NCBI GenBank assembly: GCA_023213395.1
Contig: CM041465.1
Coordinates: forward strand, 205,413,741 to 205,477,740
Reading direction: 5' to 3'
DNA length: 64,000 nt
Source: Cycas panzhihuaensis
Taxonomy: Eukaryota > Plantae > Cycadophyta
Notes under the pieces: generated by a model
The model's input: the letters and a program-made list of their open reading frames with translations, nothing else
Database searches by the model: none
What the model was told of the DNA's origin: nothing
Shown: positions 5,241 through 64,000 of the stretch, in pieces
Position numbering within the stretch: position 1 is the first letter of the stretch
Layout: each line of letters starts with the position of its first letter
Position numbers and translations under genes: made by a program

Positions 5241-5317
5241 AAATAGGATAATCCCAATCTTTATGATAACTCAACTGCTATAGGTTGCAAGTTCCCTACA
5301 TTCACATTAAGGAGGGA

Positions 5318-14637: not shown

Positions 14638-14963
14638 TATTGGAGCGCGTGACGCTAACTATCATAAGGAAGTCCTCTTCCCAAATCACTCTGGGGCTTT
14701 TGGTGTAACGGCAACCTATGACAAGTGGTATCAAAGCGACCAGGGTTCAAAATTGGTCCTGTGTACCATGGTAGCATACCCAAAGATACGTGAAGGTGTT
14801 TATAGGGTAGCGCCGAGGAACGCCGTGATGGATATACAATGTCATGTAGGTACAACTAACTCCTTATGACGGGGGAGTGATGGAGCATGTGACGCTAACT
14901 ATTACAAGGAAGTCCGCTTTCCAAATCACCCCAAGGCTTTTAGTGTAACAGCAACCTATGACA
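14638..14963 (+). mobile_element. Complete 326-bp TRIM (terminal-repeat retrotransposon in miniature)
   Basis: 86-bp LTRs at 14638-14723 and 14878-14963. PBS tggtatcaaagc at 14726-14737. PPT gggggag at 14871-14877. TSD TTTAT at 14633-14637 and 14964-14968. Interrupts the host integrase motif RYFITF. Confidence 0.96.
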
Positions 14964-27094: not shown

Positions 27095-27132
<38 letters not shown>

Positions 27133-27191
27133 ATATATATATGTATGTATGTATATATATATGTATGTATGTATATATATATGTATGTATG

Positions 27192-27223
<32 letters not shown>

Positions 27224-27242
27224 TGTATACATATATACATAC

Positions 27243-27309
<67 letters not shown>

Positions 27310-27336
27310 CATACATACATATATATATATATATAT
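27095..27336. repeat. 242-bp compound (TA)n/(TATG)n/(CATA)n microsatellite within the integrase zinc-finger region
   Basis: Read directly; it accounts for the YIYI ORFs in all six frames. Confidence 0.97.
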
Positions 27337-33200: not shown

Positions 33201-34996
33201 ACAAACCTATGCTACCCTCATCTACCAACTAATATTTATATAAAGGCAATAGTTCCTTTGTGGCCCTTTTCTTAATGGGGTCTAAATTTGATTAGGCAAA
33301 TTTATACTACATCTACTAAAGGTCATGATTTAATCTTAACAACTATAGAATACATGGCAATGTTAAGCAAAGCCATTATACTAATTACTATTATAGAAAA
33401 AGTCATTATTATGTTTATCTTCTAACACACCATATATAAATTTAGGGTCCCTAATATAATTATCACTAATAATAGATCTTATTTCTATAATAAGCATATG
33501 AATGAACTTTGTAACAAATTTACTATCACACATAGGATCTCATCCCCTTACTACCCACAAGTAAATAGAGAAGTCAAAGCCTTCAATAGAATTTTAGAAA
33601 ATTTTATGTTAAAAATTATATCCACCTCACATTAAGATTTATATATCTAATTGTGTCTAATATTATGGGCCTATAAAAGCTTAATTTGTATAATAAATAG
33701 TATGGCATCCTTCTCCTTGATATACGACAATGAAGCAATACCTTCATTAGAAGTTGAAATCGCCTCCTTTAAAATATATTATAGCCCCCACAACCTAGAG
33801 ATAATATAGCCTAGTAGGTTAGCGTCATAAGTTAATATAATAAAATTAGTAATGGGTAGTAGCATTTAATATAGTTACATAATGTTTGAGACCACACAAA
33901 AGTTAATAAAAGGTATTATCATGAGGAGTATGACAGCATAAGGGTTAATTATATGCACTAGAATTAATGATGTGGTAGTTAATGTAAGTGAGTAGTTAGT
34001 ATGATGATTAAAGTAGTAAGTTTATCAAGTTGTGTGCATATTTTATGTATAAATACACCCTCCTATGTATTGTAAACGTTAATTACTATTTTATTAAATC
34101 AAATATATTATTCTTCAATGAAGATGAATATATTAATTTTCATTTACTCACTTGATTTTCATGGGGTTTATCATCAAATTCCTTGAGTATTTTAGATAAC
34201 AAATTCTAGCTCTATTACAACTGATATTAGAGTGGTGATACTTGACTAGTAAGTAATAATTTTTTCTTCTATTGAGGTTTTATTTACTATGAGGATTAAA
34301 TCACAAGTTATCAAGTCCAATTGATAACTTTATATTTCACTTTAGAGGATTTGAAGGAACGAGTTAAGATTTAGTGTATTGATTTACAAACACCACTAAT
34401 TTCAATTAGTAATTTAGCCATTTGAATATGTTGTAAATTTAGAGATTACCCTAAGGTTTTTAGAGCCATATCAAGGGATATAAGTGACTTTATGCTAACA
34501 TAGAACATTTATGGACATGAAAAGGTTCCTCAACCATAATTCATCATAGGCACAATGTGTAGTCTAGTCCTATATATTTCACACCTAGTTTTTTATTGCA
34601 CATGCCTTTTTGCATAAGCCAATAATAGTATCATTAGGGTTCCAACTATATTTATATAATCTGTTAGGATGAATCAATCTCAATAATCACTATAAAATCT
34701 ATAAGAAGTAGACCAAATAGCATAATCTTTATTATGAAATAAGAACAAATTATAGACCAAGCTCACCAAAGAGAATCAAAGTAGTACAATAGCATGCTAG
34801 GACACAAGATCACATATATTTGATAACCCTACTTTGCTCTTGTTAGGCCTTTTATAGACAATAGCGACCTCTCTACAAGGCTACCATTAGTAAGAGAAAA
34901 TGACCCACATATATGTTAAGGGCTAGCACTAACTATTATGTCAAGTGGTCATATGTGCTAGTTAATAGGTTTCATGCAATTAGGTTGGCTATGTAA

Positions 34997-40900: not shown

Positions 40901-41443
40901 CTCAAAGTAATAGAAACTTTAGAAAACATAAATGAAAGTAGGAGAGGGTTTTCAGAATTTCACTAAGCGAAAAAAAAATCCTAATTTTTTTCATCCCTCC
41001 TATTGATCTACTTCTTTGGGTGGATCTACAACTTAGCCCTAACATCACTTGGAAGAGTTCCATAAGTAATCCACATCAATTTTTTATAAAGAGCACCTAG
41101 AAAATTGTAAAATATACAGCTAATATATTTATTTAATTAATTTATGCACCAAAGTCATAAAAAAAGGTACTTATAAGAACACCAGAAGATCACCAAATTC
41201 ATATGATAATGGGATATTATAAATGAACTCTAGACATAATCTTTCCTTTACAAAAATTAAGCCTTAAATAGATGAGAATATCCCTTCTTAATACAATTCT
41301 ATTGGTGGAAAAGATTTCCCTCATTCTTATTGGAGGATATAAGTAGTCCATGCACACAAATTCATAACAAGCTCTAACCATCATGTGCCTTAGTCACATG
41401 GACTGATAATGCAATTTTTCTAGCTATAGATACATATGTAATA
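34997..41443 (-). mobile_element. Degenerate chromovirus (Reina-like) Ty3/gypsy element (E), TSD TGTAA/TATAA
   Basis: LTRs at 41050-41443 and 34997-35360, eroded PBS at 41036-41047, PPT complement gccctcct at 35362. Minus-strand motifs: gag HVDDKAYHW (~39400), protease LIDGG (~38610), RT YKELNKIT, HGHFEF*VMPF and FFDDILI (37900-37590), chromodomain HLVQWVNYDLKEATWE (~35478-35428). Confidence 0.87.
40066..40094. repeat. (CT)n microsatellite
   Basis: Read directly. Confidence 0.92.
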
Positions 41444-44400
41444 TATAATATGCCCCCTTTCTTAAGATGTTGAGTCCTCAAAGTTGAGCTAGGTTTGGAG
41501 CTAATAAATAAACTTTATTATTAACTTCCTTTTTTGTGACTTTGTTTTGGATCCAACTCTTTTACCAAAGGACTAAAAGATATTATACTTAAATTGGATA
41601 TTATCTAGGGAACCACTAATAGCTTATTCTTTTTAGAGGATTGAGACAAGATTTTAGGAAGTGGTTAGTGGTATTTCATAAAAACTAAAAATAAGGAGGA
41701 TATTATGAAGTGAGTTGTTCAATAATATAGAAAGGTAGACTTCAATATTATTAATACATGTTATGAGACTAAGGCTAGTCTTATGGTGTTTTTGAATAGG
41801 AAGTAATGGTATACTATAGAGCTTATGATTTATTTCAAGCTAGTCTTTAAAAAGGATAAATAGATTTGTAGGGGAATTATTAGTACTATAGGTGCTTAGA
41901 GTTTATAGCCATTGGACTCCTAATATGGCATCTAATATACCAATAAAAATAACATAAAAATCAAAGATTAAATAATATGTTCCTATTTGAATATGGAGGC
42001 CTTTAGCAATTGATATATAATAGAGAACTTGGTAGCCTGAAAGAGAGTAAGTGAAGTTTATTTTTAGTACTATGTATAAATTGAGCTACTAAGCATAGGA
42101 GATACCTATAAAATTTAATGAAACACCATTATAAATAAGAATGGCCATGGAGGTTTTATGTAATATACTTTTAACTTAGAGGGATAAGGGGTAGAAGATA
42201 GAAGAAAGATTAGCCAAGGATACCATAGATTTGGGAAGAGGATGGGATTCATAAGGAGAGTTTTCACTTAATTCCTACTCTGATTCTGATTTCCTATTTA
42301 TAAATAGGTCCACATCAATGGTGAAAACTATGCATCAAGATTTATAGACTTTAATGTGATCATGGGTCCATTATTTTGCATATTTTTTACATAAATTGGC
42401 CTCTTATCATTTGTTTTCTTCTGCTTGAGAGACATGTAATGGGTCTGTTAGCCTTTTAGGAGATACATTATCTAAGGGATTCATTTATTAATATTGCCAA
42501 ATTGGTAATTGAGGATGTTAATGGGGCTTAGAATGATTTGATTGTTGGTATTGCTAGATTGTTGGCCAATGTTCCTATCATGAAGAAATTGAGTACTCTA
42601 TTACAAATTTTACTTCTATAGCCTTTACCATGGATATCACTTATTTTAAATTTGGTGGAAACATCGTTTTTAGGTCTATTTGAATGTGATACTTAGTCAT
42701 GTTATATACGTTTCAACATGCATATGATGATCAAGGGACTAACTCACTCAATTTTATAGATTATAGAATTCATCTATGTAGGATTCTATAGATGATAGAC
42801 ACTTTAATAAAGTAATCTAGCTAAAGAAACTTAGGTTCCATATGTCCTCATTCTACTTGAAGAAGTTGTTGTAGAACTAAGTTTATGTATGATCAGTTAG
42901 GTACTCTCACTACCACCACTAAAACTAGTGATGTGCTTTTCCATCTAAATGGATTAAGACAAAAGTTAATTGGTTATCTAGATACATGGGATTAAGGGCA
43001 AAGTAAGACTGCAATTTATTGATCTAACTCCTTACACTATCCTTATTTAGATCCAGATCAAACATTGGGATATTGATCTTATGATAAAAAGGTTATTATT
43101 ATAGACCCTAGTTGGGAGGGGTTATTTGATGTTGATTTAATATTCCTATTGAATTTGAGGTAGAGATCAAGTTCGACAATTAAGTAATTAGATTTACAAT
43201 GTCATTTGTCAACTTTATGAGGTCTTTCTAAGTAGCCATATTACTTGATATTTAGGTGATTTCATTCTACATGGTGGTGAAATCACTTTACATGGTAGTT
43301 AATTAGGTCTTTAGAGCTAAAATTCAGTCTACTTATGTTGGTATCATTATTTGGATAAATGAACTACTAAGGAGAAAGGGATTCTATGAAAAGGAATTAG
43401 AAATATAGAATGGGATAAATGATTTGGGAAGAGATAGAAAGAAGGGGACTAAAGAAATAAGAAATGAGTTAAGGGAAAGAGAAAAAGGGGGAAGGGATGA
43501 GGTTCTTAAAGCCTATTGACCCTAAAAAATATATATATAATAAATTTGCCTAGTGCACTAAGATAGGTGTGAAAAGCTCATCAAAATGAAGTAGGTTTGT
43601 TTTAAGTAAAAATTTTAGACTATGGGGCCTAGAGGGTGCTTATATGTTATTATACCCTAAGAATATTTGTTAAAACTACTCTTGTAAAATATGATCAATA
43701 TGATGCACTAATCAAAATAAGATGTATGATGACTAGGGGTAATTTTGAGCTATGGATATTCTTATTTTATTTTATTTACACTAAGTCTACTAATGCAAGT
43801 TTTATTTGAAGCAAATGAGTATTTACAAAAGTGACCCTATGAACCATGTGATGACTCTTATGTTCCTTTTTTTTTTGGAATTATTATACTCTAAAACTAA
43901 GGGTTTAGATAGGAAGAAAGAAAGACTATGACTTCACTATTATTGCAGTTACTATTAGCTATCTTTATTATAGTTATGTGCCTTTAATTATGTTAAATAT
44001 AAAATTGTGCTTTATTTTTTCTTATAATATCTTTTGGTAGTTCTAGACAATATGGAAGCAATAAAATTTTTATTAGACTTTTGATATAAATGTGCCTAGT
44101 CTGTAGGCCCTTCGATAAACTTATTACTTATTACTACCACTTGACCCAAAATCTAATGGTGCTTACTACAAAAAATTGCCCATACTTATAGTCATAATAG
44201 TCATACTAAAGTATTTGTCAAGGGTAGCTTCATAGCACTAATCACTAACCACTAAATTATAAATTTTTATCAATCAATAGTTTACTTAATCTATGTATAG
44301 AAGGAAATGTTAAATGGGTCCTCCTATATACCTAAAGATACAAGGAGTCTCACTTTCATAGCTAAGTGTTATCTAAGGCCTACATATACAATGTAATCTG

Positions 44401-47400
44401 TTTTGCTTCACATAGTGATGTATAGCCAAGTACACTTGGCCAAGAATGATAGCCCTTTATGATATTTATAGACCCCCAACATAGGTTCTTTTCCTAACCA
44501 CTGAGGGAAAATGGGTGAGAGGGATTACTACCTAATTATTATGTATTATAAAATATTGCTTGCAAAACTATAATAACAAAAAATAGAATAAAATATAGGA
44601 GAGGATTATGAAGTTTTTTACCATGGGGGAAAAAAAAGAAATATCCATAATTTTCTAGCTCCTTTCTCATAATTATGCATTCTTGATCCCCCAAACTTGA
44701 TCACTAATCTAGCTTTGATACCACTTACGATAAACTAGTCCTAATGATCACCACAGAAAGAAAATCAAAGCAGTACTATAATATACTATATAGAAGGTAA
44801 CATATATTTGATAACCCTACTCTACTCTTACAAGGCCTTTTATAAATAAGAGTGGCCACTCTATAAGAGTACCATTAGTAGGAGTAAACAACCCGCACAC
44901 ATGTTAAGGGTTAATACTAACTATTATATCAAGTTATTACATGTTCTAATTGATAAGTCCTATGTGATTAGGTTGGCTATGTAACATCTATAGACTCTCA
45001 ACACTATTCTCTAGTAACATTTGCCTCTAAATTGATGTTGAAATTGATAATTGTTTTAAAGTATCCCTATAGAAGTAATCCTATATACCTAGGGTTTCCA
45101 CAACATTTCATCATATGCCACCTATAATAAAAGTATTTTGTAGTCCATGGAATGATCGACATCATAACTGGAGTAACTAGCAAGTTTGTAATTTTGTTGG
45201 GCACCATTGTATTAAGAAATCATGGGTCTTAGCTTGGAATATTGCATAATGGTAACTTGGTATTGAAGTTAGGCATTTCTCATGTTCTTTGATGAAGTTC
45301 ACAAATATTTGCAAGTTTAAATTTACACTATAAACTAATTAAAATCCTAAACAATTTAAATGAATGCAATAGAAACCTGTATGTAGTCAAGAAAATTTGA
45401 TTCAATACTGATGGAAGTTATATATATTAAATGAAAATCTAAATAGTGAAATATATAATTGAAAGATTTAGCATATTTTATATTGTAAAGTTTTTATTAA
45501 ATTAAGTTAAGTTGAATTTTTATTTCAAATCCATTTTATCTCCCTTTGTCTTAATGGGTCGTTATAATGTGACTAAGTTCATTTTGGAAAAGGGATTAGG
45601 GTTTAATTTACAATGTCATCTTGAAATGTTAACACATACTTATACATTTTGCCTATAATTTCTTCATATAAACTTAGAATTTAATTCCATCTAACCTAAC
45701 CAAATCTACATTTTATAACCTTTAGTTTGATATTATATAACCTATTCTAAAGCTATTTTATAATAAATAGTAAAGTTTGAAGTTAGGTCTTATAGTTTTA
45801 TGATGCCTTATATTATATCCTCTTGCATTGTTTGATATTGTTCAAACTTTAGCTAAAAAGCCATCGCTTTTAAGGTTATAATATTTCCTTTATTTATTAA
45901 ACTATTAAAAAAAACCATCATGGTATGGCCTTAGACCTGAGTGAAGACCAAAATTCTTGATTTTAGTCATCATGGTTCATTTACTTTTGACAAATGGAAT
46001 GTAACCCTACTCACATACTTTCAGGAGACCAAACTAAAGATTGAGTATAAGAAAATTTATTAAGGTTCTTTACATTCAGAAGATGGGTTTATGCGGTGGG
46101 CATACTCTTGGCACTCTAAACATAACATGGCCTATTAGGATGACTTCATTTTGGCTCTTCAAGAACATATTGATGAGATACTACTTAGAGAGAATCGAGT
46201 AGAGACTAAACAAGAAGAGGAGCAATTTATTGATCATGTTTATAGTTTAGAAGCTCCCTCAAAAGAGAATATAAAGGTGACTCCTACACCCATTTTTGTT
46301 GTAGATGTTAGAGTTGATTATGTAAAGAGTAGTAATGGATGTGACTAAGAGGACTTAAGTAGACACATCAATGCCTAACTTGATCTTATTAAGTAATGGA
46401 TAATATAAACCAATAATAATATTCACAAGCTCATGGCCAAATAGGGATGACTTGAAACCTCCATTGTGTTATTAGTATTAGATGAAGGTTCTCTTTTGGG
46501 TGAATGTGAGAGTCCTACATTTATAGAAAGCAATAAGACTCCTCTTACGGTTGCATATGTAGAGTGGAGGAGAAGGGCATTATATTATGTATGGATGTTA
46601 AGCATAAGGAAATATTTCTTGATGATACCTTTCTTCCCCATAATTTTTTCTTATCAAAGAGAACATATGGACTTCAAAGAAAAGTAGGAGATTAAACTTT
46701 CAAGTAGGAAATTTATTAACATGTATTTGGGGCCTACATTCATATTTTTAAATTTATATATTACCATTTTACTATACTTTAGGATCATAAGTTTTTGACA
46801 TGCATTCTAATTCATATAAAAATACGTATGAATATCATCACTCTCCTTTAATGAAGGGTATAGTAGCAATTTCCACATATTAATATAAATGTAATATATA
46901 TACTTTTGACATCCCAGCAACAATAGAAGGTAGTCACATCAAAGTTTTATGGTTGAGGAAAACCATTTCCTAAAGAGGAAGGGAATGTTATATTCCCCAC
47001 AACCTAGGGATGGTATAACCTAGTAGGTTAATGTTATAGGTTATAATAATAGAGTTAGTAGTTGGCAATAGCATCTTATACAGTTACACTATGTTTGAGA
47101 GTGCATAAGAGTTAATAAAGTGTATTGGCATAAGTAGTATATGCATTGGAAGTAATGATGTGGCAATTAGTGTAAGTGAGTAGTTAGTGTGAGGATTAAG
47201 GGCAATGAGTTTATGAAGTAATGTGCATATTTTATATACAATTTCACCCTTCTATGCATTGTAAAGGTTAATTATCATTTTATTTAATCAAATCTATTAT
47301 TCTTTAATGAAGATCGATATAGCAATATTCATTTACTTACTTGATTTTCTTAGGGTTTATTATCAAATTTCTTATGTATTTTAGGTAATAGATGTAAGGT

Positions 47401-50400
47401 CTATTACAAAATATCACTTAAAGTATTCATACATTATGGGTAAATTAGGAAAGTTAGTTTACTTCAACTAGAAAATATGGATCAAATAAAATTCAAAGCC
47501 TATTAATAAAACCTTGCCTCTAAAGGGTGCATATCATAGAAACCTATGACCTAGAAAATTTAGAGGATATAATAAAGCACACAAACTTGAATATTTACAT
47601 AATAGACAATGTAAATTTCCATCAAAGTAGATAGACCCTTTTGTTATAATTAAATATCTTGGCAATGGGGCCTATTAGTTAGCCACCATGGAAGGCTCAA
47701 AGTTTAAGAATTTAGGAAATTCTCAATATCTCTATAAATATTATGCATAATCTCTCAGGTGAATAGGCTCCATAATGAGCATAACCTATAGCAAACTCTA
47801 AGATGATTATAAACTAGACTTTCTTCATAATAAAGGTAAACTATGGATTCTCTATAATTAAGATAAATTATAAATCTTTCATAATGTAGGTAAACTATGA
47901 CTCTCCTCAACTAAATCACTCAAGGGCATACCTCTGTAACAAGCATAAACTAATTAGGATTTTAAACTTTAGAAGAGAACATGGAGTGAAAGTAAGTGGC
48001 AAATAATTTAGCTTAAGGGAAATAAAATCCCTTAGAAGGATAAACATATGTGAGAATCTTGGGCCATGGGACATTATTAACAAGATTGTAGGTTTGTTAT
48101 TAATAATATATTAAAAGGAATCCCATATGATCTATAAACTAGTCATATATTAAGTGACTTATTATCACTCATTTAATGTTAGACAAATCTCCTTAGAAAG
48201 TGGCACACAAATATTAGCTACCTAGGCCTACCTAATATTGATAAATACTCATATAATACTTTTTGTGCATGCTCTATGAATCTCAATTAATCCTTGCAAA
48301 GATGGTCAATAAGTCCAAGAACTATTTATATAATTTTAATATTACTTTATTTGTTCAATAATCCTTGTAATCAAGTAAATCGAGTAACCCTAAATATGAA
48401 TAAATATTTACAACCAATCTTTCTAGGTAATTTTCTTTATCTTTAAATGACTTGCCTCTATTTTCCATTACAATATGATTTCCCTCAAAAGTAGTCCATG
48501 ACAAGTATAAACTAACTACACTCTGTGACAAGTATAAACTAATAATTGCCCTTCTATTGCCATAAAAAAAAACTTTTTCTTAAGTTCCTACTTTTGGGTT
48601 GAGCTCTTCTTTTCTCTAAATTATACATAAACATTTAACAAGTGTGTTTATGTAGATTCCAAAGTTACTAAGCTTAAATTTGGTGTCAAGTTCCATAATA
48701 CATATAATTGGCTTGTGGATCAAGGCCTCATTTCTAAGGACCTAATTAATATTATCTCAAAACTACTACTCTTTATAAGCTAACAATCCTTATTTTAAGC
48801 CAAGATCTCAAAACAATTAACCATCCTTATCAATTCCCTATGGTATGAAAATTAATCCTCAAAATAACAAATAATATTGACCTTTAATTCCCTTATATAT
48901 TTCTTTCATGAAATAATCCTACACTTGCCTCACAAATAAACTAGACTCCATTGAAAACTCTTAGCTATATACACAAGGATCCTAATTTACTTGATAATAA
49001 CCCATCTCCCTTTCTATAAACACTTGCATTACTATCTTGCACTAAGAAGGTCATGATCAAAAGATGGCCAAATTGAGCATCTATTACCCTAGGTTCAATT
49101 AGGAGAAAAAAGACTCCACCCACATTGTTTAAAAAACCAAAAAAAAAAAAACAAATCAACTAAGAAGAGCATCTATAAGATAAATTATAAACTTCACACT
49201 TAACTATTACATAAAAATCCATCTTAGGACTTAGGGTAGGTCACATGTCAATATCATCCCCACCTACTAATGTATAGTTTAGGTCTAGATCAAATGCATT
49301 ATATAAAGACTTCAAATATTGCTTATAGTCCATAAAGGCTCTTATTAGATCAAATTTCACTTAACCATTAATAAATAAAATCAAGAGGATTAATAAATTA
49401 ATAAATAATTATGCTATCTTGGCACCTAAAATAGGTTATGTATTAATCTCATCCCCACCTACCAATATGTAGTTTGATAATAGATTGGATATATTACTCA
49501 ATGACTTTAGGTTCAATGTAGGTATGTTCATCATGAATTTCATTTAAATCAAGTCATGTTCTAATATGTTTACATTAAGTTTAGGTAGTTACCTGTGAAT
49601 GCCCTTCTCAAACTAGGGACAAGTTTTCTACAATCCATCTTCTTTCCAATTATTTCTCAAACTTCCTTCACTCATCTAATAGTCTCTCAACATAATCTTT
49701 TAAAGCATGTTATATTTCCCTATTATATGTATCATTTATTTGGAAGGAAGAAGTCAAGGAAACCCAAGGCTTTCTATAGCATTTTAGATTATAGAAATCC
49801 CTATAGGTCATGTTTTAAAAAGTGTAAGATTATCCCTCCCTACTATAACCAATAACCTAGTTGAGTATACTATAGTTATAGATCATTACACGATGTAATC
49901 CATGCCTAGATCATAGATATAGATTTTTGTACTAGTTCTCTCTTAGTGGATCAATAACTAATTAGGGCTTGTCAAGCTTGAAAGCCCAAGGTTTATGTAC
50001 TTATAAACTTAGTTAGATCCTTACTTGTACACTTTTCACATGTTCAAATCCATCACTTCCCAAGATCTTAGAATATAACAATGATTTTTTTAGTCAACTA
50101 GATTATTGAATAGTGTCTTTAGAAGAGGCATTCTGATAACATTTAATATCTCACATCACTTGTTTAAAGAATTTTTGTCATCGAAGGGGAAAATAATCAT
50201 TAGTTCACGACACCCTATAATAATTAGGGATATCAACATTGTTCTTACTAAGGATGGCAATGTGTAAAATATAACTAGATTTCAACTCCTTTATTTGGTA
50301 TTAAAAAGACTTGATTCCATCATAAGACTACCTAAAAAATGATTGTTTCCTTAACTATTAAGTTTAAAATTTTAGGTTATTATAGTATAATTATTATTTA

Positions 50401-52999: not shown

Positions 53000-55517
53000 G
53001 TTAATAAATTCAAAATTTTAAACTGTTCAGTTTTTGCTCTCTAATGTAATTAACTAATGTGGTATGATTTTTGATATGGATTATTGAAATAATTTATACC
53101 ACCCACTACCCTTTTTACTAATGATGTTAAACAAAAGGTACATAATAATTGAGAAAAGAATCTAGTTTATGGTGATGTATAACTCAAATTCCTTTTGAAC
53201 CTGACATGTGGACCTTCTTACAATACTCCTATAGGGTTAAGACCATCTTTGAGTAAGGTAATTCCTTTTTTCCCCTTTATTTCATTTCTATCTAAAGATT
53301 TTTACCACAAATTGTGATGTTTTATATTCTATCATGATATTTTTAGTAAAAAAACATAACATTGACTTTATTGATATTGCAATAATTTGGCTGTCATTTT
53401 TATCACAATTTTATATTATAGTATTCTTTAGAAATCATGATCTTTGTTGCCAATTCATTGCACAATTAAAATCTTGGTCTTCCATTCCTTGACTTTATTA
53501 TGATTTTAGCACCATAGTTTCTTTCTTAAGTTATGATTTTATTAAACATTGCAATCTTAGCTAGTTGAAAACACAGTCTTTAGTTGGTTACCTTTATTGT
53601 GACATGCATTGTGATTTCCTTCTCAATCCATAATACTCCCTTTAACACCATATTTTTTCTTACTAAAAACTATAAAATTAGTTCCATTAACCGTTTTAAT
53701 AAAAGCAAATACATTTTCCATGACTTAGCATTGTAGTCTTCTTCTAAAAACTATATATTTTAATAAATTTAATACAATTTCTTATGAAAACTATGGTTTT
53801 CTACAATACTCATTATAATGTTGGATCCCCAAGGAAAAATTAGATTTTTCTCCTTGATTATTAAGACTTTTTCCCCTCCTAAGCAGCTTTTAGGCCCATT
53901 TATTGTGAGTAGAAATCATAATCTTCCCAAAACCAAGTGGGATTGAGTGAAAATATCTAAAATATATTACCTATAAATAGATTCTTTTTTATAAAGAAGG
54001 GATTAGCTCTTTATGAATTTTTAGAGTGAATATACCTCCTTTATTTCTATGTCATTTCTCCATTGACTAAGAGCCTAGTGATTTAAGAGAGATTTTACCA
54101 ATTTAGGGGTTGTTTCATTTGATTTACATCTTGTTTCTACCTAATATTAGACATGTTGTTGTACCTTCTCCCCTTCCACACAAGGAGAAGAAGGTCTTCT
54201 TTTATCATTTATTCCCTTGAAATATCACTCATAACTTTGACTAAGGAATGCTTGTATTTGACTTTATATCATAACATGCACCTTCCTAACTAAGGCATCT
54301 ACACTAACATAAAGTTATTATCTTGATTTAACTTGCTTATTTCTCTTTATCACATTTTCTTTCTTTTGCTATTATGCTTATGCTAGTTAATTTGCTAAGT
54401 TTATATTTAGAATTGTTATTTCTTTTTATGATTAGATAACCTTCTTTTTGACACATGTGTCAACTCTTACACTCTTATTTCCATTAAAAATATGTTGGAT
54501 GTAGGCATTACTATGCCTAAATTTTCATACTATTATGATATTCAAGTTTGCTAATTAGTCTTTGATTTAATATCTTTTCATAAATAAACTTTCTTTTACC
54601 AAGGAATAGAGTTCCTTTAATATGGTCATTATTTTTACCTTGCCAACCTTTTCTTTTATGAGAAAGGATCACACGAGTCTAAGAAAAATAGATCAATAGG
54701 AGAAGATAAAAGGGAAGTAAATCAAAAAAAGAGATATTCTTGACCCCACATTTTCTATTTGTATTTTCTTTAGTGTATATTTGCTTAAGTTTTTTTTTTT
54801 CTTATACCACTCCTTCTCCTATGGTATCAAAAGTAAAGGTAGTCTCTAATTTGGAAGAATATGACTCATTCAAGTCCTCTTCTAATATCTCCATAAAGCA
54901 TTCCATTGCTTTCTTATTTGGAGAGGACCTCCAATCCTATTCTTATTTTTTATAATTTTGACTTACCTATATACATGTTTATGATCTTTGTTTATAAAGG
55001 AAAAAGAGAACTTTGATTTCATAATAAAAGAAAGACCCATAGTAAATGTATGAGGTTTCAACTTTTCTGATAAGAAAAAACATATAGGAAAGAACTATAT
55101 TTTTGTTATGCATTATATTTCTTTCTTATATTAAATAGGTACTTAGAAACTATACACTCATTTATTTTCTCATATTATAACTTCACTTATTCAATCCACT
55201 TGTTGTGTTGAGGACAAATGGGAAATTTTTATTTGAGGAATTGAGTGGAGGCATAGTTACCCTAGATACCTATATACAAATCACCCTCTTCTATGAGGTT
55301 TGATATGTTGTAGAGATAACCATATATCTCCTACCCTTAAAGTTGGAAGGAGTCTTATTTTAAGATTCAAGTTAGTGATAGGAGTAACCCTCACATTGGA
55401 TAACACTTTTATATCTCTCTATAAATAGATAAGCCATAAATTATACTCTCTAAACTATGATATGATATGATATTTTATGACATGAGATGGTCATAAAATG
55501 AAGAATGATTATAATTT

Positions 55518-55544
55518 TATATATAGACAGATAGATAGATATAG

Positions 55545-55577
<33 letters not shown>
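55518..55577. repeat. Compound (GATA)n/(GTAT)n microsatellite
   Basis: Read directly. Confidence 0.9.
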
Positions 55578-55610
55578 CCAAATGTTATCCAAAATAGTAT
55601 AATTATCTAT

Positions 55611-56800
55611 TGTTAAGAGTTAATCTTTAATGTGTCTAGGAGAATATTATATTTAGGGTTATTAATGTATAGTCCTTAAGGGGTATTGTATCATGGTCTA
55701 TAGGTTAGTATTAATGTTAATATTAATGGTCTAATAGAAGTGTTATATCAAGTTATTAAGTGTGCTTAAGTACATCTTTATGTGTAACACCTAATTAATA
55801 GGTGAAATAGTTGTTAATTTAGTTGGAGGAGTTAGAGATAGACCCAAGTATAAATATGCACTCGACTCATTTTTAAAATTATAAATACAACAAAATTTAA
55901 TTTCAATGTTTTAACATGGTATCAAAGCAGGATACTTATCAAGCTCATCATTACATAGGTTTACCATTTTATTGATGTGTATAGAGGTGGCTTCGTAGAG
56001 TTGATTGCTAATTGAGGTTCTAATTTCAGAAGGTGAAGCCCTAAGGCCATCATTATTACAAGTTGTGCCAAGCCAGTGATAGTGATTGATACAAAATAGA
56101 ATTTTTACTAGAAAATATTATTCCTTTACTTTGTTATGTGATGAAAGCTTTATGCTAGGGTTCACTCTATAAAGACTTGATTGGTGTGAATTTATGAAGC
56201 TAAAAAGTGATGACATATGAATAAATATGAATTTTTATGTGAATAGAGGTTAGCCTAGGTATCAAGCTGATCGTTTCTATGTGAAAGTCACCCAAGGAAA
56301 AAAACTGTAGAGGTACTTAAGAGTGTGAAAAAAGAGAAGACCATAGTCTAAGATAGCTATAAGAAAAAGGATTCTTTGTGCAGAAAAAGAGATGAAGAAG
56401 TCATCTACAAGGAGAAAGTAGCCATAGTAAAGTGGCCATCTGTTTGTACTAGAATTTAGTCACCAAAGAGTAGAAGAAGACATTGGTTATGTTGGAGAAA
56501 TCACATGAAGATAGCCACCACACAAGTCTATATATGAAAGATAAATAGTGAGTGCATAACCCTAAGGCTACTAAAGAAATGAAGAAGTTTTGTTTAATCG
56601 ACATAGGTCATGGAAAGGAGCTAAATTTATGAGGAGTCATTTGGAGAAGCTTCCCACACGATAATTACACAATTTCCATAGCAATTTAGTAATTCCAAAT
56701 AATGCTTGGTAGCCACCATCTTTCATGGGACCACTAGACTAGACTGAGTTAGGGAAACCAAAAATTATGATGGAGGGAAACTGTATGATCATTCTCATTA
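55611..56800 (+). mobile_element. 5' LTR (55611-55916), PBS and degenerate internal region of an LTR element; right end not resolved
   Basis: TGTTAA...TTAACA termini, tataaat at ~55849, PBS tggtatcaaagc at 55917-55928. Confidence 0.75.
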
Positions 56801-57302
56801 GACCTTCTCCAACCTAAATTATTATAACACATCCTTAGATGGTAATGTTCCAACATTTATTTCATTCCCATATGACCTTGACACTAGTTGATAAGTCTGC
56901 ATGAGTAATATATGTCTTTATTGTCAACAAAGGACATAATATATATAGTAAAATAGAGGTTAGATTTATTTATTGCATAAACAAAATTTTAGGGTTTAAC
57001 AGAGAAGGTTCAATCTCCACCAACATCCATAACTGCCACTAAATCCATAGATTTGGCTACTTCAGTACAATAGTTATTAATAAATTTTGGTTTAACCTCT
57101 TTAAAATCATCTTTGAATACAACAGTTACCACACAAAAGATGGATTTCCACTTATTATGAAGAGATTAAAGGAGGAGTTGCTTAGACTATAGAGATTCTC
57201 CATGTGTAAAATAACAATTCCCTTATAAATAATGAATAACTAAGAAGTCTAGAAGAATTTTAATCCAGTGAATGTAGTCGATTGGTTCATCGTCATTGGT
57301 CA

Positions 57303-58361
57303 TGTTAATATGGTGGTTATTTGTTAAGCCACTAAATTAATGTTAATGTGGTTTAACTAAGGTGATTAAACGAAAAGGTGCAACTTATTTAGAGGGTCAC
57401 AACCCTAATTGGGTGACACCTCTTAGAAGAGTATAAAAGCCTTAAGGCCTTGTGTATTCAAAGTATCAAATCAATTAATTAATATGATCCATCAAGGATC
57501 CTTTTGTAATGGATTTTTTCTCAAAAATGTTTTCCCATATAAATCCTATATACTATACATCTATTTTTTGTGTGTATTATTGTTTGCTAGTTGTGTATGG
57601 TTAAAGATTCTATAGATGGGAACATTTATGTATGATTTCATGTTCCCAAATATGGTATCAAAGTCGTAGGGTCCTACACAGTTAAAGCCTGACATTGAGT
57701 GGAGCGATAAAATCATTGGTTACTGGGTGAACCCGTTAAATCCAGGACTTGTCTTAAGGGTCCATTAACTCAAGCAACATATAAAAGTAGGCACAACAGA
57801 TTAGTGGTTATTGAAGCGCTGAAAATCACTCATCAATGAAGAATAAGGGTTGGTTGTTGTCAATATTCAGATGTGCAGACCATGAACATAGAAAGAGGTG
57901 GCTCATTTGGGGTCATCTGAAACTGGTTCATGAATATATATATTGTTGGAGCTAGTAGAAGTGCATGCTAATGGAGATCAAATAGTATTGAGGATAGCCA
58001 GTCATGTATATACATAAGTCAATTATCTCTCTCATAAAAATACCATAAAAATCAATTAAATAAGCACGTTCTTTACTATTATTTCCTATCAAATCTTTCC
58101 TTAGCACCTGTGGACGTGATTGGAACCTATATTGGTATTTTTCTATCCATATGAGAGTGCTAGAATGAGTGTACAATAGTAGAAGATAGAATTCTTTCTA
58201 AGTCAAGCTACTTCATTGGTGTTTTTTTGGAGACTTATATATGAGTTGAGCTTGGAACAACCATATTAAGGTTAGTTGGGCACTTAGTGAATTGGTTGGA
58301 CATGTTTTGGAGAAGATTGGGTAGCGTACATCCTATTTACTAGCCATACGAAGGTTGTATA
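57303..58361 (+). mobile_element. 5' LTR (57303-57652), PBS and leader of a C1-family copia, interrupted by the TRIM/copia block
   Basis: LTR is colinear with 5318-5694. PBS tggtatcaaagt at 57653-57664. Leader matches window positions 1-340. Confidence 0.88.
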
Positions 58362-58599
58362 TGTCACAGGTTACCGTTATACCAAAAGCCCCGGGGTGAT
58401 TTAGGAAGAGGACTTCCTTGTGATAGTTAGCGTCACGTGCTCCAACACTCCCTCGTCACAAGGAGTTGACTGTTCCTGCATGGCATTGCATGTCCACCAC
58501 GGCGTTCCTCAGTGCCACCCAACAAACACCTTCACGTATCTCCAGGTGCGCTACCACGGTACACAGGACCAGTTTTGAACCTTGGTTGCTCTGATACCA
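58362..58599 (-). mobile_element. Second TRIM copy (PBS, internal region, PPT and 3' LTR; own 5' LTR absent)
   Basis: The reverse complement is colinear with 14726-14963. LTR 58362-58447 is 86 bp with TG...CA ends. Perfect PBS TGGTATCAGAGC at 58599-58588. Confidence 0.95.
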
Positions 58600-58601
58600 C
58601 A

Positions 58602-58913
58602 TGAAGGAAGGATGGATCTAGGAGATAAATCACTCACATGCACACAATGGCAATGGAGAATAAAAAAGAAGATAAAACAAGATATGAGAGCAAGCTTGGA
58701 GGTGAGAATGAATAATGACTCCCTCCTTGAGATTTCAACTTTTATTAATAAGGGTGAGCATTAGGATTAGGATTTTCTTGCCTAATGACATGAACTTGAA
58801 ATTACATCTAAATGCACATAAAGTACATTTCACTAAGAGACTAATGCTAACAATATATCATAAGGTCACATAATTAATCTACACAAATGACCTTGATACA
58901 TTAACCTCTTTCA
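58602..58913 (-). repeat. 3' LTR of element Y (312 bp)
   Basis: Directly follows the PPT and has TGAA...TTCA inverted termini. The partner LTR is outside the window. Confidence 0.82.
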
Positions 58914-59229
58914 ATCCCCCCCTTAATGGTGGAAGATCATTTTTAGAAAATCTATTCTATGAGGTCTTCATTTGAGCCTCATTATTACATTAAAATTCTA
59001 AATGACACTTTTGTGGGAAAACCCTCATGGGGAATAAGAACCTACGAACTTTCTAAGATCTATAGCCCCTTTTATAAATCAGAATAGCTAAGGTGGCTCT
59101 TTGATGTAGCCTAATAGCCAAGTGACTTAAATGTGTAGCTTAATCTGTTAAGTCTCCATATATTGTTTGGTCATTCCCTATGCCCTTTTGGGTTTTCATA
59201 GGTTCTGATTTTCTAAAACAAGTACAACC

Positions 59230-59333
59230 CTTATCCTTCCGTGCCCACATGGGGTTTTCACAAAGAGGATAGAGCAGAGACTTACTCTTATTCTTCCGTG
59301 CCCATAAGGGGTTTTCACGAAGAGAATAGAGTA
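59230..59333. repeat. Direct repeat with 57-bp period in the 3' UTR of Y
   Basis: cttatccttccgtgcccacatggggttttcacaaagaggatagag and cttattcttccgtgcccataaggggttttcacgaagagaatagag. Confidence 0.88.
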
Positions 59334-59420
59334 TGATGATCATGTTTCCATCTTCTTTGATCAATTGAAGATGGAGGCCCTAAGGCCGAGCTGCCTTTGG
59401 AACTGTTTAAACTTCACCCT

Positions 59421-62400
59421 TTATAGCGGTTTGGTGAAGATATTGGCCACTTGATCTGCTGTGGGATAGTAATCTAACTGAATTGTGCCGTCATGAACAA
59501 GTTCCCTAATCCTATGGACTTTCATACTTATGTTTTTGGTATGATCATGAAATATAGGATTTTTCGCCATGCAGATTACTGATTGATTATCCACATGAAG
59601 ACTCGTAGGACTTGTTTGGGTGATATTCAATGTTTCCAATAATTTTCTCAGCCATATCACCTCTTTATCGGTCTCGAAGCGAATGTATTCAGCTTCGGTA
59701 GTTGAATCTACAACTATCTTCTGCCATTTGGATCTCCATGATACTGGTGTTATTCCAAGAAACATTACATACCCAGACATAGATCTTCCCGTATCTTTAT
59801 CTCCTGTAAAGTCTGAGTCTATGTATGCAGAAAGCTTGAAGTCTAAATTAGGTTCATACAACAGACCATATTTGTTAGTCGTCTTAAGGTATCTCAACAC
59901 TCGCACTGTTGCCTGCCAATGATTCTGCTTAGGATTTGTCATGTAATGAGCAAGAATGCCGACAGAGTGTATAATATCTGGCCTTGTATTGGTAGTGTAG
60001 ATGAGACTACCTACAAGTTTCCTATAGAGTGTTGCATCTATCTCCCTAGTGTCACCTTCAGTTAAGAGTTTGGTATCAGGATCCATAGGTAACATCACCG
60101 GTCGAGCATCTTCTAACTGAAACTTGGTTAGAAGATCATTGATGTAATTTTCTTGGGAGAGGAAAATTTTTCTATTTTTTTGTATTACTTCAATTCCCAA
60201 GTAATATTTCATCAAACCGAAGTCAAACAATTTGAACGTTTTACCAAGGTCTTTTTTCAGCTGGCTTATTACCTGTTCACTATTACCCATTACTAGCATG
60301 TTATCCACAAAGATTATGAGATAAGTGACTTTATCCTTATGGCGCTTGATGAACAATGTTCCATCAATATCTTGATAGTCACAAACCTCGTATCCAAGTT
60401 ACCTCATCCTTTCAGACAACTTGGCAAACCAAGCGCGAGGGGCTTGTTTAAGGCCATACAAGGATGTTCTGAACCTACAAACCTTATGCTCTTGACCTTC
60501 AATCTTATATCCTTCTGGCTGAGCCATGTAAATTTCTTCTTCAAGATCTCCATTGAGAAACGTGGTCTTAATATCGAATTGGTGGATTTTCCAACCCTGT
60601 TGAGCAGCTAAGGCCACAAGAGTTCTAATTGTAGGCCACTTGGTTGAGGTGCAAAGACTTCAGTGTAGTCGATACCTTCCCTTTGTGTAAATCCTTTAGC
60701 TACCAACCTCACCTTGTGTTTTTCAAGGGTGCCTTCTGATCTATATTTATTTTTGAACACCTATTTATTTTGAACTACCTTTCTACCAAGTGGTAGATCA
60801 ACTAGCTCCCATGTATCGTTCTTAATAAGAGATTGGTACTCTTTGTTCATGGCATTTCTCCAAGCTGTATGCTTTATAGCTTCTTGGTACATTAAGGGCT
60901 CTTCATTAAGAGTAAGGTACAATTCAGTTGGTTCAAGCTCAGTATATAATGATTCCTGCATCCTTGCTTTATGGGCACTTCGAGTGCCAGTTTTGCCCAT
61001 CTCATCTGGTTGTATGTCCTTATTGAGCTGGCAGGCTTCTCGAGATCCTTGAGTTGGGAATGATGTCCTCATTTCCCTAACTTCTTAGTTCTCATCATGT
61101 TCGTTAAAATGATTATTTTGTAAGGAGGATGTTGATGTGCCTGAGGAAGATGGTCCTTTTACCATTATTTTGCCTTTGTCAGCTGAAGGTGGAGAGGATG
61201 GTTCTTCTATAATAGCTTTGCCTTTATCAACTCTGTTATCTTCAAAAGATGGTGTTGGATGTGCACTCATTTGTTTAGAGTCACAACTTGTATCCTCCAA
61301 GGCTCTATTGTCAGCTTCCAACATTTGGAGTAATTTATTTCTACCCCCCCCCCCCCCCCCAATTTTAGAATCTGAACATCATACTTGATAACATTATTGT
61401 AGCAGTGTGAGGGTACTATGGAGTCTAGTTTAAGTAATCGATCCTCTGTCTCTACAAAAATGACATCTCTGGTAACGATGATTTTTTGTTGTGAAGATAT
61501 AAAGACCTTATACCCTTTCTTATCCATAGGGTATCTAACAAAGATGCCTTTAAGTGCCCTTGGCTGGAGTTTGTTTCGATCTACATCCAAAATATGGGGA
61601 TAGCATCTAGAGCCAAAAATTCTAAAGTAGTGAACAATGGGGGCTTGTCCTAACCACTTTTCATTACGTGATTGTACTTCCTTTGATGGGCTAACAGTAT
61701 TGATACAATAAACGATTGTCCAAATTGCTTCAACCCATAGATAAGCATGTACATTTTTATATATTAACATAGCACGAGCCATGTCCATGATTGTCCTATT
61801 CATGCACTCAGCAACTCCATTTTATTGTGGGGTACCTGCTACTGTTATTTGATGCTTGATGCCATTGTCTCGAAGGTAGCTTTCAAACTTATGTGAGGTA
61901 TATTCACCACCATTATCAGTTCAAAGATATTTGAGTTGATAACTTGACTCTTTTTCAGTGAGGGCTTTGAATTCCTTAAATATACAGAATGCTTTATCTT
62001 TCTTGTGTAGAAAAACTACCTATACTTTTCTAGTAAAATCATCAATGAAAGAGATGCAATATAGCGTGCCCTTTAGTGAAGGAATGGGCATTGGCCTACA
62101 CAAATCAGAGTGTACCAATTGTAATAGATGGCTTGATTTCCACTGACTTTTAGGAAAGGGTTGTCGATGAGATTTGGCAATGATACAAGCTTCACATATA
62201 AAGGGCTTAGAGGAAAACTTTGGAAGGTTTGGAAGAGTATTAGAAAGATCTCTAAGTCTATCAATGTGAACATGGCCCATACGAGCATGCCAAAGAGCTT
62301 CTGGTGATAACGTTGGATGGGTCAAGATGGAATTAAATGCAAATTCTTCATCAACACAAGGGCTTTGGGTACAATTGGCTTTAGAAGATGGAGAGTCATC

Positions 62401-63940
62401 CAGTCGAAAGAATTTGCTAGAGAGATGTCCAGTCAAAACTACCTCATTAGTTAGAGGGTGAATGACCTTACGAGTCTGGTCATTTATGGTTATACTCAGA
62501 TCAAATCTACGAGAAATAAGTGTAGATGAAGAGATTAGGTTTTGTTTGAGATTGGGTATATATAAGACATCAAGCAATGTAAAATCTTTTAAGCCTGGGA
62601 GTTTCAGGCGAATGTTGCCAATTCCTTCAACAGGTTGTTGTGATTTATCAGCCATGTGAATAACTCCATAAACATTTGAGTCAAATGTTTGATATATACT
62701 GCGATTATATATCATATGTTGAGTTGCTCATGTGTCCATGATCCATTGTCCATCGATTGAAGCTACACTATTGGCAATTCCAATAGGGCTTGGCATTGGT
62801 GAAGGGAATTCACAAGTGATATATCCACACTGAGCTTCAAAGTATCTCTTTGGTTGGTCAATAGCATTTGATGTTGAAGATCCCTCAATTCTTTGAATGT
62901 GTGCTTGTACAAAACTTGCACCACTAAAGGATTTTTCACAAGTTTCTTCAACATTGTGAGCTCCATGTTTTGGTTGGAACTTAGCCAACTTATAAGTGGC
63001 AGTTCTGCAATCTTTTGCTAAATGTCTTTACGGTTACATTGATCACACATAATGGTTTGATTACCAGTCCCTGAAGAAGTACTAGTTTGGCCTGACTGTC
63101 TTGCTCTTTGTTAAGATGGCCCTTGGCCTTGAAACTGTCAAGGTTGTGATTGAGGGTTTGATTGACCTTCTGGATGATTTCCCATATTTCTTTCTCTTCC
63201 TCTTACTCGGTTATTTCCTCTGCCACGAGAGGGACCTTAATTTTTTGTGTAGCAAACTTCTTCTTCTACCTCAAAGGCTACATCTGGAAGAGAGTCAGAG
63301 GCTACAAAGTTTATATCAAAGGTCTTGTCAAATTTTATAAACTTTTCGGTAAGTCCTTTGAAGTTGAGTGTCTTCAATGTTCCACTAGATTGAAGACTTC
63401 CAAGCAAGTTTTTATAATCAGGGACATGTAAACATGACTGGATCAAAAATGCCCAAGTGATGCATTAGGTCTTAAAGTCTTTGTCAATTGCTTGTTTGAT
63501 TGGTCGAAGGAGATTTATTGTCTCATGAGCTCATCCCTTTTGCATTTTTAATTTGTTCATTTTCAAAACAAGATGAACAAATTCTAAATCTAACTTTGTA
63601 TCAAAGTTCTTTCTAAGAACATCTAGGACCTTCCAGGCTATATCATATTCCTCTTCGTTTATCAAGCTGTGCAATGAGTGATAAATGACCAACAAAATTC
63701 TTGCACGAATCTTTTCACCATCTATCTCCCATTGTAGTTTAGTTGTAGCATCTGTAAGAGCTGTTGGGGCAGATCCACTCAAAGTAGTTGTTGTAGTCGT
63801 TGCTGGTGTACTGGGTGTAGGTTACAAGTGGGCTCTCCAAAGGCCTTCATACTTTGTAGCATTTTTAATTCTAATGTACCATATATCCCAATTTTCTTTG
63901 CCTTTCAATATGCAGTTCACATTTTGCTTGAATTGAGATG
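59421..63940 (-). pseudogene. Copia gag-pol of Y with stops and frameshifts
   Basis: ORFs 63531-63782 and 63237-63446 (gag), CDQC..H..KDC knuckle at ~63050-63005, WIMDT*ATQHM protease, 62020-62715 (LWHARMGH, FIDDF), 61267-61803 (integrase), 60399-60617 and 59421-60356 (RT/RNase H, VANIFTKPL). Confidence 0.94.
61344..61360. repeat. C17 homopolymer in the INT-RT linker of Y
   Basis: Read directly. Confidence 0.95.
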
Positions 63941-64000
63941 ACATGGTGATGATAAAGAAGTAGAAGAGATTATATAAGTATGTGCCACTTACACATGTGG

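What the first reader, a model, noticed from the sequence alone, without database searches (positions are those of the whole stretch)
58362..58926. TRIM joined at its PBS to the LTR of a coding copia: candidate helper-parasite chimera
Seen: the minus strand reads copia pol - PPT - copia LTR (...CCTTCA) - TG - TGGTATCAGAGC - TRIM internal region - PPT - TRIM LTR. The copia LTR sits exactly where the TRIM's own 5' LTR sits in the complete copy, with the same 2-nt spacing to the PBS. The spacer is TG here and AG in copy 1. Known: plus-strand strong-stop DNA is LTR+PBS and transfers by PBS annealing, and tRNA-iMet PBSs are shared among plant families. Inference: a strand transfer between co-packaged copia and TRIM cDNAs could have produced an integrated hybrid with two different ends. 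That would identify the TRIM's mobilising partner, even though the two LTRs show no similarity. The alternative is a base-exact nested insertion between the TRIM LTR and its PBS.
Basis: partly seen in the sequence, partly recalled or inferred. Interest (0 to 1): 0.82.

Follow-up and report, generated by a model that had tools for sequence, protein, structure and literature searches.

The report
Copia LTR joined to TRIM primer site
A decayed plant copia retrotransposon ends with its long terminal repeat placed, to the base, where a miniature retrotransposon (TRIM) should carry its own; this is either a reverse-transcription hybrid of the two or a coincidental nested insertion, and about 1 kb of sequence just past the window end would decide.

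Summary
Read on the minus strand, the order is:
- decayed Ty1/copia "Y" pol
- PPT (58924-58915)
- putative Y 3' LTR (58913-58602)
- spacer TG
- iMet PBS (58599-58588)
- TRIM internal region
- TRIM PPT
- 86-bp TRIM LTR (58447-58362)
- flank TATAC

Homology to the complete TRIM (14638-14963, TSD TTTAT, spacer AG) starts at the spacer.

What made the junction cannot be settled.

I lean slightly (about 0.5) to a reverse-transcription join through the shared PBS. The result would be a heterologous version of the known three-LTR "complex" elements and tandem TRIMs. An ordinary nested insertion gets about 0.37. It needs a hit at one base position in one orientation (about 1 in 650). It also needs a transversion at the spacer (about 1.7% per site).

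The claim that this identifies the TRIM's helper goes beyond the data.

First-stage notes report similar PBS-bracketed units elsewhere in this genome. I could not check them. Interest is moderate, and the decisive test is cheap.

The parts
59421..63944 (-). Decayed Ty1/copia element Y, internal region: gag ATG at 63944, pol stop at 59423-59421
   Evidence: ORF fragments. Pfam finds Pol_BBD, gag_pre-integrs, SH3_retrovirus and RVT_2, with integrase before RT. In-frame stops in gag. Only 32-39% amino-acid identity (RT-RNase H and integrase fragments) to the other copias of the window.
58925..59420 (-). Y 3' untranslated region, with a 57-bp tandem duplication (59331-59284 and 59274-59227)
58915..58924 (-). 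Y polypurine tract AAGGGGGGGA
   Evidence: Read directly. It lies one base upstream of the TG that opens the putative LTR.
58602..58913 (-). Putative Y 3' LTR, 312 bp, TGAAAGAGG...CCTTCCTTCA, 34% G+C
   Evidence: The boundaries rest on the PPT, the TG/CA ends and a 7-of-9 terminal inverted repeat. There is no second copy in the window, so the boundaries are not confirmed by an LTR pair.
58600..58601 (-). 2-nt spacer TG between the LTR end and the PBS (AG in the complete TRIM copy)
58588..58599 (-). Primer binding site TGGTATCAGAGC (tRNA-iMet type)
   Evidence: Exact match. The same 12-mer is given as the Cassandra TRIM PBS in PMC7215508.
58448..58587 (-). TRIM internal region, ending in the PPT GACGAGGGAG (58457-58448)
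   Evidence: 83% identical to 14725-14878, E 2e-42; gap-free alignment
58362..58447 (-). TRIM 3' LTR, 86 bp, TGTTGGAGC...CCTGTGACA
   Evidence: 90% and 85% identical to the two LTRs of the complete copy
58357..58361 (+). Flank GTATA (TATAC on the minus strand), candidate target-site duplication of whatever integrated here
   Evidence: Read directly. Its partner lies beyond the window.
57302..58356 (+). Host element: copia 5' LTR (57302-57650), PBS-like TGGTATCAAAGT (57653-57664) and a leader, interrupted at 58361/58362
   Evidence: The LTR is 68% identical to 5317-5688. PBS context; sequence.
14638..14963 (+). Complete reference TRIM copy (326 bp): LTRs 14638-14723 and 14878-14963, spacer AG, PBS 14726-14737, TSD TTTAT on both sides

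Best explanation
**Proposal.** The junction was made during reverse transcription, not by integration. A TRIM RNA and a Y-family copia RNA were in the same virus-like particle. Both carry the same tRNA-iMet primer binding site.

**Favoured variant.**
1. Minus-strand DNA made on the TRIM RNA (TRIM LTR, PPT, internal region) reaches the TRIM PBS.
2. It does not stop there for the normal plus-strand transfer. Its 3' end pairs with the PBS of the Y RNA.
3. Synthesis continues through Y's spacer, U5 and R.
4. It jumps by R to the 3' end of Y RNA and copies U3, PPT, pol and gag.

The product is one concatenated cDNA: [LTR]-PBS-Y interior-PPT-LTR_Y-TG-PBS-TRIM interior-PPT-LTR_TRIM. It was integrated once into the leader of the host copia, with GTATA as its target-site duplication.

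**What this variant predicts.** The far (5') LTR is a TRIM LTR, and Y has no 5' LTR of its own. The variant takes about 0.3 of the 0.5.

**Shown.** The order of the parts, the base-exact junction at the LTR end/spacer/PBS, the shared PBS, and the non-TRIM first base of the spacer.

**Inferred.** Co-packaging, the template switch, and the single integration.
For: 1. **Position of the junction.** It coincides to the base with a landmark of reverse transcription. A complete LTR end (CA) is followed by a 2-nt spacer and the PBS, and TRIM homology begins at the spacer.
2. **The spacer base.** The first spacer base is T here and A in the other TRIM copy. Over the other 239 aligned sites the two copies differ by 35 transitions and only 4 transversions. 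Under nesting this is about a 1.7% per-site event. A switch inside the PBS would simply import Y's own spacer.
3. **The internal LTR.** It is flanked by a PPT on one side and a PBS on the other. This is the signature of three-LTR complex elements attributed to template switching (PMC1950507) and of multi-LTR Cassandra TRIMs. Those make up 15.5% of TSD-flanked intact copies in pear (PMC4079214).
4. **Precedents in TRIMs.** Tandemly arrayed TRIMs occur in 129 subfamilies (PMC4717578). Chimeric TRIMs with LTRs donated by other families are reported in sugar beet (PMC13570524).
5. **Leads only.** Unchecked first-stage notes report one-LTR units bracketed by PBS sequences in other copias of this genome. 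The same mechanism predicts that reciprocal arrangement.
Against: - The far end of the structure lies outside the window. The single TSD and the nature of the 5' LTR are therefore untested.
- Nested insertion is by far the commonest cause of two retroelements lying side by side, and this window is heavily nested.
- No heterologous copia-TRIM concatemer turned up in the papers I read.
- The Y LTR boundaries rest on one copy.
- The spacer argument rests on one base and on one reference TRIM copy. If many TRIM copies carry TG, it vanishes.
- My estimate of how often such chimeras form is a guess spanning two orders of magnitude.
Confidence: 0.5

Rival explanations
1. Ordinary nested insertion. 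A complete TRIM first integrated into the host copia leader, with TSD GTATA. Later a Y copia integrated into it in the same orientation. Its 5-bp staggered cut covered exactly the TRIM spacer plus the first three PBS bases (TGTGG). The Y 3' LTR therefore abuts TG-TGG..., and the TRIM 5' LTR lies beyond Y's 5' LTR, outside the window.
For: - Nesting is the default in this window. At least six LTR pairs are interleaved within 64 kb, and the structure itself sits inside another copia's leader.
- Every base is compatible with a canonical Y LTR end (CA) followed by a 5-bp TSD.
- No unusual mechanism is needed.
Against: - It requires one particular position out of about 326, in one of two orientations (about 1 in 650).
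- It also requires the TRIM spacer of this copy to differ from the other copy by a transversion. That class is 4 of 239 at the other sites.
- The two coincidences together are of the order of 1e-5 per nested TRIM.
Confidence: 0.37
2. The reader's specific variant, a subset of the best explanation. Y plus-strand strong-stop DNA (LTR plus PBS) transferred onto the PBS of a TRIM minus strand. The integrated hybrid has a Y LTR at one end and a TRIM LTR at the other, under a single GTATA duplication.
For: It gives the same junction as the best explanation. The PBS part of plus-strand strong-stop DNA is copied from the tRNA primer. It is therefore identical for all iMet-primed elements, which is established retroviral replication knowledge.
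Against: - On its own this transfer gives only the 565-bp hybrid. Keeping Y's pol-PPT upstream and also building a Y 5' LTR needs a second Y strong-stop DNA or a ligation step.
- The integrase would have to process two unrelated LTR ends (TGAAAG... and ...GTGACA).
Confidence: 0.15
3. Composite LTR. The Y lineage had already taken up a PBS-to-LTR piece of a TRIM at the 3' end of its own LTR. The true Y 3' LTR would then be 58913-58362 (552 bp), and the same composite would be repeated at Y's 5' end.
For: The block ends in a proper CA and is followed directly by the candidate TSD.
Against: - A working PBS inside U5 would misprime reverse transcription.
- It still needs the same base-exact junction to have arisen once.
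- No other Y copy is available to show it.
Confidence: 0.04
4. Post-integration DNA rearrangement (a deletion between a Y copy and a nearby TRIM), or an assembly mis-join at the shared PBS.
For: The terminal CA is shared by both LTRs, a 2-bp microhomology. A 17-base homopolymer inside Y shows that the assembly has at least one suspect stretch.
Against: - A deletion would need both break points to fall exactly on LTR ends.
- A 12-base repeat is far too short to mislead a modern assembler.
Confidence: 0.05

Closest known systems
Three-LTR 'complex' LTR retrotransposon insertions made by template switching (Sabot and Schulman 2007, PMC1950507)
   Same: An internal LTR is shared by two internal domains and flanked by a PPT and a PBS. 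The proposed origin is one reverse-transcription event on two co-packaged RNAs, followed by one integration.
   Different: The known cases join two members of one family (Angela, Squiq, Opie) through LTR/R homology. Here the partners are unrelated (a 5-kb copia and a 326-bp TRIM) and share only the PBS. The defining single TSD and matching outer LTRs are unverified here.
Tandemly arrayed / multi-LTR TRIMs (Cassandra in pear, PMC4079214; TA-TRIMs in 35 plant genomes, PMC4717578; Cassandra arrays, PMC7215508)
   Same: A TRIM unit (PBS-internal-PPT-LTR) follows an LTR that is itself preceded by a PPT. The same iMet PBS 12-mer is used.
   Different: Those arrays repeat one TRIM family. Here the upstream unit is a protein-coding-type copia with an unrelated LTR.
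Chimeric non-autonomous LTR elements with donated LTRs (sugar beet TRIM-08 with LTRs from TRIM-01 or TRIM-05, PMC13570524); Veju_L and BARE-2 chimeras (reviewed in PMC13317346)
   Same: Modules (LTR, internal region) from different families are combined, and the combination is attributed to template switching.
   Different: Those are TRIM-TRIM or autonomous-autonomous mixes. A concatemer of a TRIM with a copia interior was not reported in the papers I read.
Nested LTR retrotransposon insertion (the standard 'Russian doll' pattern; TRIMs as insertion targets, Witte et al. 2001, cited from memory because the paper is not held)
   Same: One element interrupts another in a TE-rich region.
   Different: Nesting has no reason to fall exactly at the LTR/PBS boundary. 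It predicts a second Y LTR and a CCACA/TGTGG duplication, and these are not visible here.

Membership tests
TRIM (terminal-repeat retrotransposon in miniature) | Two short direct terminal repeats with TG...CA ends around a short non-coding interior; total length well under 1 kb | tested here: met
   The complete copy 14638-14963 is 326 bp with 86-bp LTRs. Its 5' LTR now starts TA. The junction copy shows only the 3' LTR within the window.
TRIM (terminal-repeat retrotransposon in miniature) | PBS complementary to tRNA-iMet next to the 5' LTR, and a PPT next to the 3' LTR | tested here: met
   PBS at 14726-14737 and 58599-58588. G-rich PPT directly before both 3' LTRs.
TRIM (terminal-repeat retrotransposon in miniature) | 5-bp target-site duplication | tested here: met
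   TTTAT on both sides of the complete copy. For the junction copy only one side (TATAC) is in the window.
Ty1/copia LTR retrotransposon (element Y) | Pol domain order protease-integrase-RT-RNase H, with a copia-type RT (RVT_2) | tested here: met
   Pfam hits in that order on the minus strand
Ty1/copia LTR retrotransposon (element Y) | Two LTRs, own PBS, 5-bp TSD | not testable with these tools
Template-switch complex (three-LTR) insertion | An internal LTR flanked by a PPT on its 5' side and a PBS on its 3' side, between two internal domains | tested here: met
   PPT 58924-58915, LTR 58913-58602, PBS 58599-58588, with the Y interior upstream and the TRIM interior downstream
Template-switch complex (three-LTR) insertion | A single TSD flanking the whole complex, and near-identical outer LTRs | not testable with these tools
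   Needs sequence beyond 64000
Nested insertion of Y into a TRIM | Y bounded by two Y LTRs and a 5-bp duplication (TGTGG); the TRIM is restored when Y and one duplicate are removed | not testable with these tools
   Only the 3' side is visible. TGTGG follows the Y LTR, as nesting requires, but that is also the spacer plus the start of the PBS.
Helper-parasite pair (Y mobilises this TRIM) | Shared cis signals beyond the generic ones: similar LTR termini, leader or packaging region | tested here: not met
   No similarity between the Y LTR or 3' UTR and the TRIM. The termini are TGAAAG/CCTTCA against TGTTGG/GTGACA. Y's leader is almost entirely outside the window.

The most novel reading that the evidence does not exclude
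The locus is a single-integration concatemer of a copia and a TRIM, made by continued DNA synthesis or strand transfer through their common tRNA-iMet PBS. That would be physical evidence that this TRIM's RNA was encapsidated together with a Y-family copia RNA, and so a concrete candidate for its helper. Together with the PBS-bracketed units noted elsewhere in this genome, it would point to PBS-guided heterologous strand transfer as a recurrent way of shuffling modules between unrelated LTR retrotransposon families.
Probability: 0.35. Interest if true: 0.65.

Novelty: new variant of a known kind. Interest (0 to 1): 0.45.

Why it matters
For most plant TRIM families the element that mobilises them is unknown. 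Gao et al. found no protein-coding relative for 278 of 289 subfamilies (PMC4717578).

A concatemer formed inside one particle would be a rare natural record of which autonomous RNA a TRIM travelled with. It would also extend the template-switching model for complex elements in two ways: from partners of one family to unrelated partners, and from LTR homology to the 12-18 bases of a shared PBS.

If it turns out to be plain nesting, the locus is ordinary. It would then serve as a reminder that base-exact coincidences do turn up when many windows are read.

Tried and rejected
**Reading past 64000.**
- The search of earlier findings takes no coordinates beyond the window. The other scanned windows whose notes I retrieved lie megabases away.

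**External TRIM or Y copies.**
- A viral contigs pattern scan gave 10 loci. All were chance 18-20-mers with no TRIM around them.
- Two metagenome-contig scans (PBS plus downstream motif; LTR core) gave zero.
- A genome-contig scan gave zero.
- The search for related loci with the Y RT/RNase H fragment in viral contigs gave none.

**More copies in the window.**
- blastn and nhmmer found no further TRIM or Y LTR pieces.
- No paralogous empty site exists for the host leader.

**Structured-RNA explanations.** Rfam (E up to 1) and ARAGORN found nothing in the region or the window.

**Relative dating of Y and the TRIM.** I considered it and dropped it. The junction TRIM LTR has about 4 private changes in 86 bases. 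Y's decay can only be gauged from stop counts. The intervals overlap too much to order the two events.

**Large protein searches.** I did not run them. Pfam already places Y, and no protein result could resolve the junction.

**Witte et al. 2001 (PMC61118).** The paper is not held. What I say about it comes from memory.

Full report
**What is there**

Read on the minus strand, the window end holds a Ty1/copia element, called Y here as in the finding.
- Its gag ATG is at 63944 and its pol stop at 59423-59421.
- Pfam places Pol_BBD and gag_pre-integrs at 62715-62020, the integrase SH3-like domain at 61803-61267, and RVT_2 at 60617-60399 and 60356-59421. Integrase precedes RT, as in copia.
- Y is not intact. 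It is split into at least nine ORF fragments in three frames, and gag has in-frame stops at codons 41 and 138.
- It is only 32-39% identical in protein (RT-RNase H and integrase fragments) to the other copias of the window.

Downstream of pol, in order:
- a roughly 500-bp untranslated stretch with a 57-bp duplication
- a polypurine tract, AAGGGGGGGA (58924-58915)
- a 312-bp block (58913-58602) that starts TGAAAGAGG and ends CCTTCCTTCA

The two ends of that block form a 7-of-9 inverted repeat. With the PPT beside it, this is a credible Y 3' LTR. No second copy exists in the window to confirm the boundaries.

**The junction**

Immediately after the final CA of that LTR come TG (58601-58600) and the exact tRNA-iMet primer binding site TGGTATCAGAGC (58599-58588). 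After these follow:
- 140 bases of TRIM interior, ending in a PPT
- the 86-bp TRIM LTR (58447-58362)
- the flank TATAC

The reference TRIM at 14638-14963 is complete. It is 326 bp long, with two 86-bp LTRs, spacer AG, PBS TGGTATCAAAGC and a perfect TSD TTTAT.

The two TRIM copies align without a gap from the spacer to the LTR end, 200 of 240 identical. Upstream of the spacer they share only the CA that ends both LTRs.

Two small corrections apply. The stated span includes the PPT, and Y is a decayed copia rather than a coding one.

**Setting**

The whole structure lies in reverse orientation inside the leader of another copia. That host has its 5' LTR at 57302-57650 and its PBS at 57653. The window is heavily nested.

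**What could have made the junction**

Two explanations matter.

*Nesting.* Y integrated into a pre-existing TRIM so that its 5-bp duplication is TGTGG, which is the TRIM spacer plus the first three PBS bases. Nothing visible contradicts this. It does carry two costs:
- It needs one position among about 326, in one orientation (about 1 in 650).
- It needs this TRIM copy to carry T where the other carries A. At the other 239 aligned sites the copies differ by 35 transitions and only 4 transversions. A transversion at a given site is therefore about a 1.7% event.

*A join made during reverse transcription.* Both elements use the iMet PBS. A nascent TRIM minus strand ending in the PBS complement can pair with any iMet PBS or strong-stop tail in the same particle. 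If it pairs with the PBS of a co-packaged Y RNA, synthesis continues as follows:
1. It passes through Y's spacer, U5 and R.
2. It jumps by R to the 3' end of Y RNA.
3. It copies U3, PPT, pol and gag.

The resulting cDNA reads ...Y interior-PPT-LTR_Y-(Y spacer)-PBS-TRIM interior-PPT-LTR_TRIM. That matches what is seen, including a spacer that is not the TRIM's.

This is the heterologous form of known structures:
- Three-LTR complexes with a single TSD were attributed to template switching by Sabot and Schulman (PMC1950507).
- Tandemly arrayed TRIMs occur in 129 subfamilies (PMC4717578).
- Chimeric TRIMs with LTRs donated by other families are reported in sugar beet (PMC13570524).

**Weighing the two**

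Assume about 5% of old TRIM copies carry a nested LTR element. This follows from the window's density of roughly ten insertions per 64 kb. Nesting then gives this exact picture at about 1e-6 per TRIM copy.

A PBS-mediated chimera gives it at about 0.06-0.1 times its own frequency per copy. It becomes the better explanation if that frequency exceeds roughly 2e-5 to 1e-4.

I think that range is plausible, because homologous tandem TRIMs are so common, but I cannot measure it.

First-stage notes on the same chromosome describe related structures:
- a copia carrying [quoted passage not shown]
- a TRIM-like unit between the 5' LTR and PBS of a copia
- several post-PBS cargo structures

These are the reciprocal products that the mechanism predicts. 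They are unchecked AI notes and I could not open their windows, so I count them only as a nudge to the prior.

My estimates are 0.5 for a replication-mediated join, 0.37 for nesting, and the rest for a composite Y LTR, a DNA rearrangement or an assembly error.

Transfer of Y plus-strand strong-stop DNA to a TRIM minus strand yields only a 565-bp hybrid. It does not explain why Y's pol and PPT stay attached upstream, unless a nick is ligated or a second strong-stop DNA is made.

The natural product of the minus-strand route has TRIM LTRs at both ends and no Y 5' LTR.

The helper claim goes too far. The TRIM and Y share no cis sequence beyond TG/CA, a generic PBS and a G-rich PPT. Co-packaging would not prove that Y's proteins built the particle.

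**What could not be done**

The decisive bases lie beyond 64000.
- Scans of viral, metagenome and prokaryote-genome collections for the TRIM found only chance matches or nothing.
- A viral-contig scan for Y relatives found none.
- Rfam and ARAGORN found no structured RNA here.

**Verdict**

This is a real, base-exact LTR-PBS junction between a copia and a TRIM. Its origin is unresolved and leans slightly to a PBS-guided reverse-transcription concatemer.

That would be a new variant of a known kind. If confirmed, it is of moderate interest because it bears on which autonomous elements carry TRIMs. Reading about 1.5 kb more of the chromosome settles it.

Noticed in passing
window 61344-61360: A run of 17 G on the minus strand (poly-C on the + strand) sits inside Y between the integrase and RT regions. 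It may be a real homopolymer or a sequencing or polishing artefact.
   Followed up: no
window 59227-59331: Two tandem copies of a roughly 57-bp unit (48 bp aligned at 87.5% identity) lie in Y's 3' untranslated region.
   Followed up: partly
window 14738-14765 and 58560-58587: Just after the PBS, both TRIM copies keep a conserved GGTTCAAAAYTGGTCC stretch that looks like a tRNA T-arm or B box. Other first-stage notes on this genome propose Pol III promoters across TRIM LTR/PBS junctions. ARAGORN found no tRNA in the window. Rfam, run only on 58200-59100, found nothing.
   Followed up: partly
window 14638-14963: The two LTRs of the complete TRIM differ at 15 of 86 sites, 12 of them transitions, and the 5' LTR now begins TA instead of TG. 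This is an old insertion with methylation-type decay.
   Followed up: partly
window 55917-57664: Two iMet-type PBS motifs on the + strand lie 1.7 kb apart (55917 and 57653), each preceded by a different LTR-like end. This looks like an ordinary nesting of the host copia inside yet another element.
   Followed up: no
window 33950-47409: Three interleaved LTR pairs show at least three layers of nesting in 13 kb: 33950-34220/47138-47409, 34806-34996/44794-44984 and 35085-35360/41168-41443.
   Followed up: no
window 318-479; 27033-27380; 55487-55626: An 81-bp tandem duplication at 94% identity (318-479), and (GATA/TATG)n-type microsatellites at two sites.
   Followed up: no
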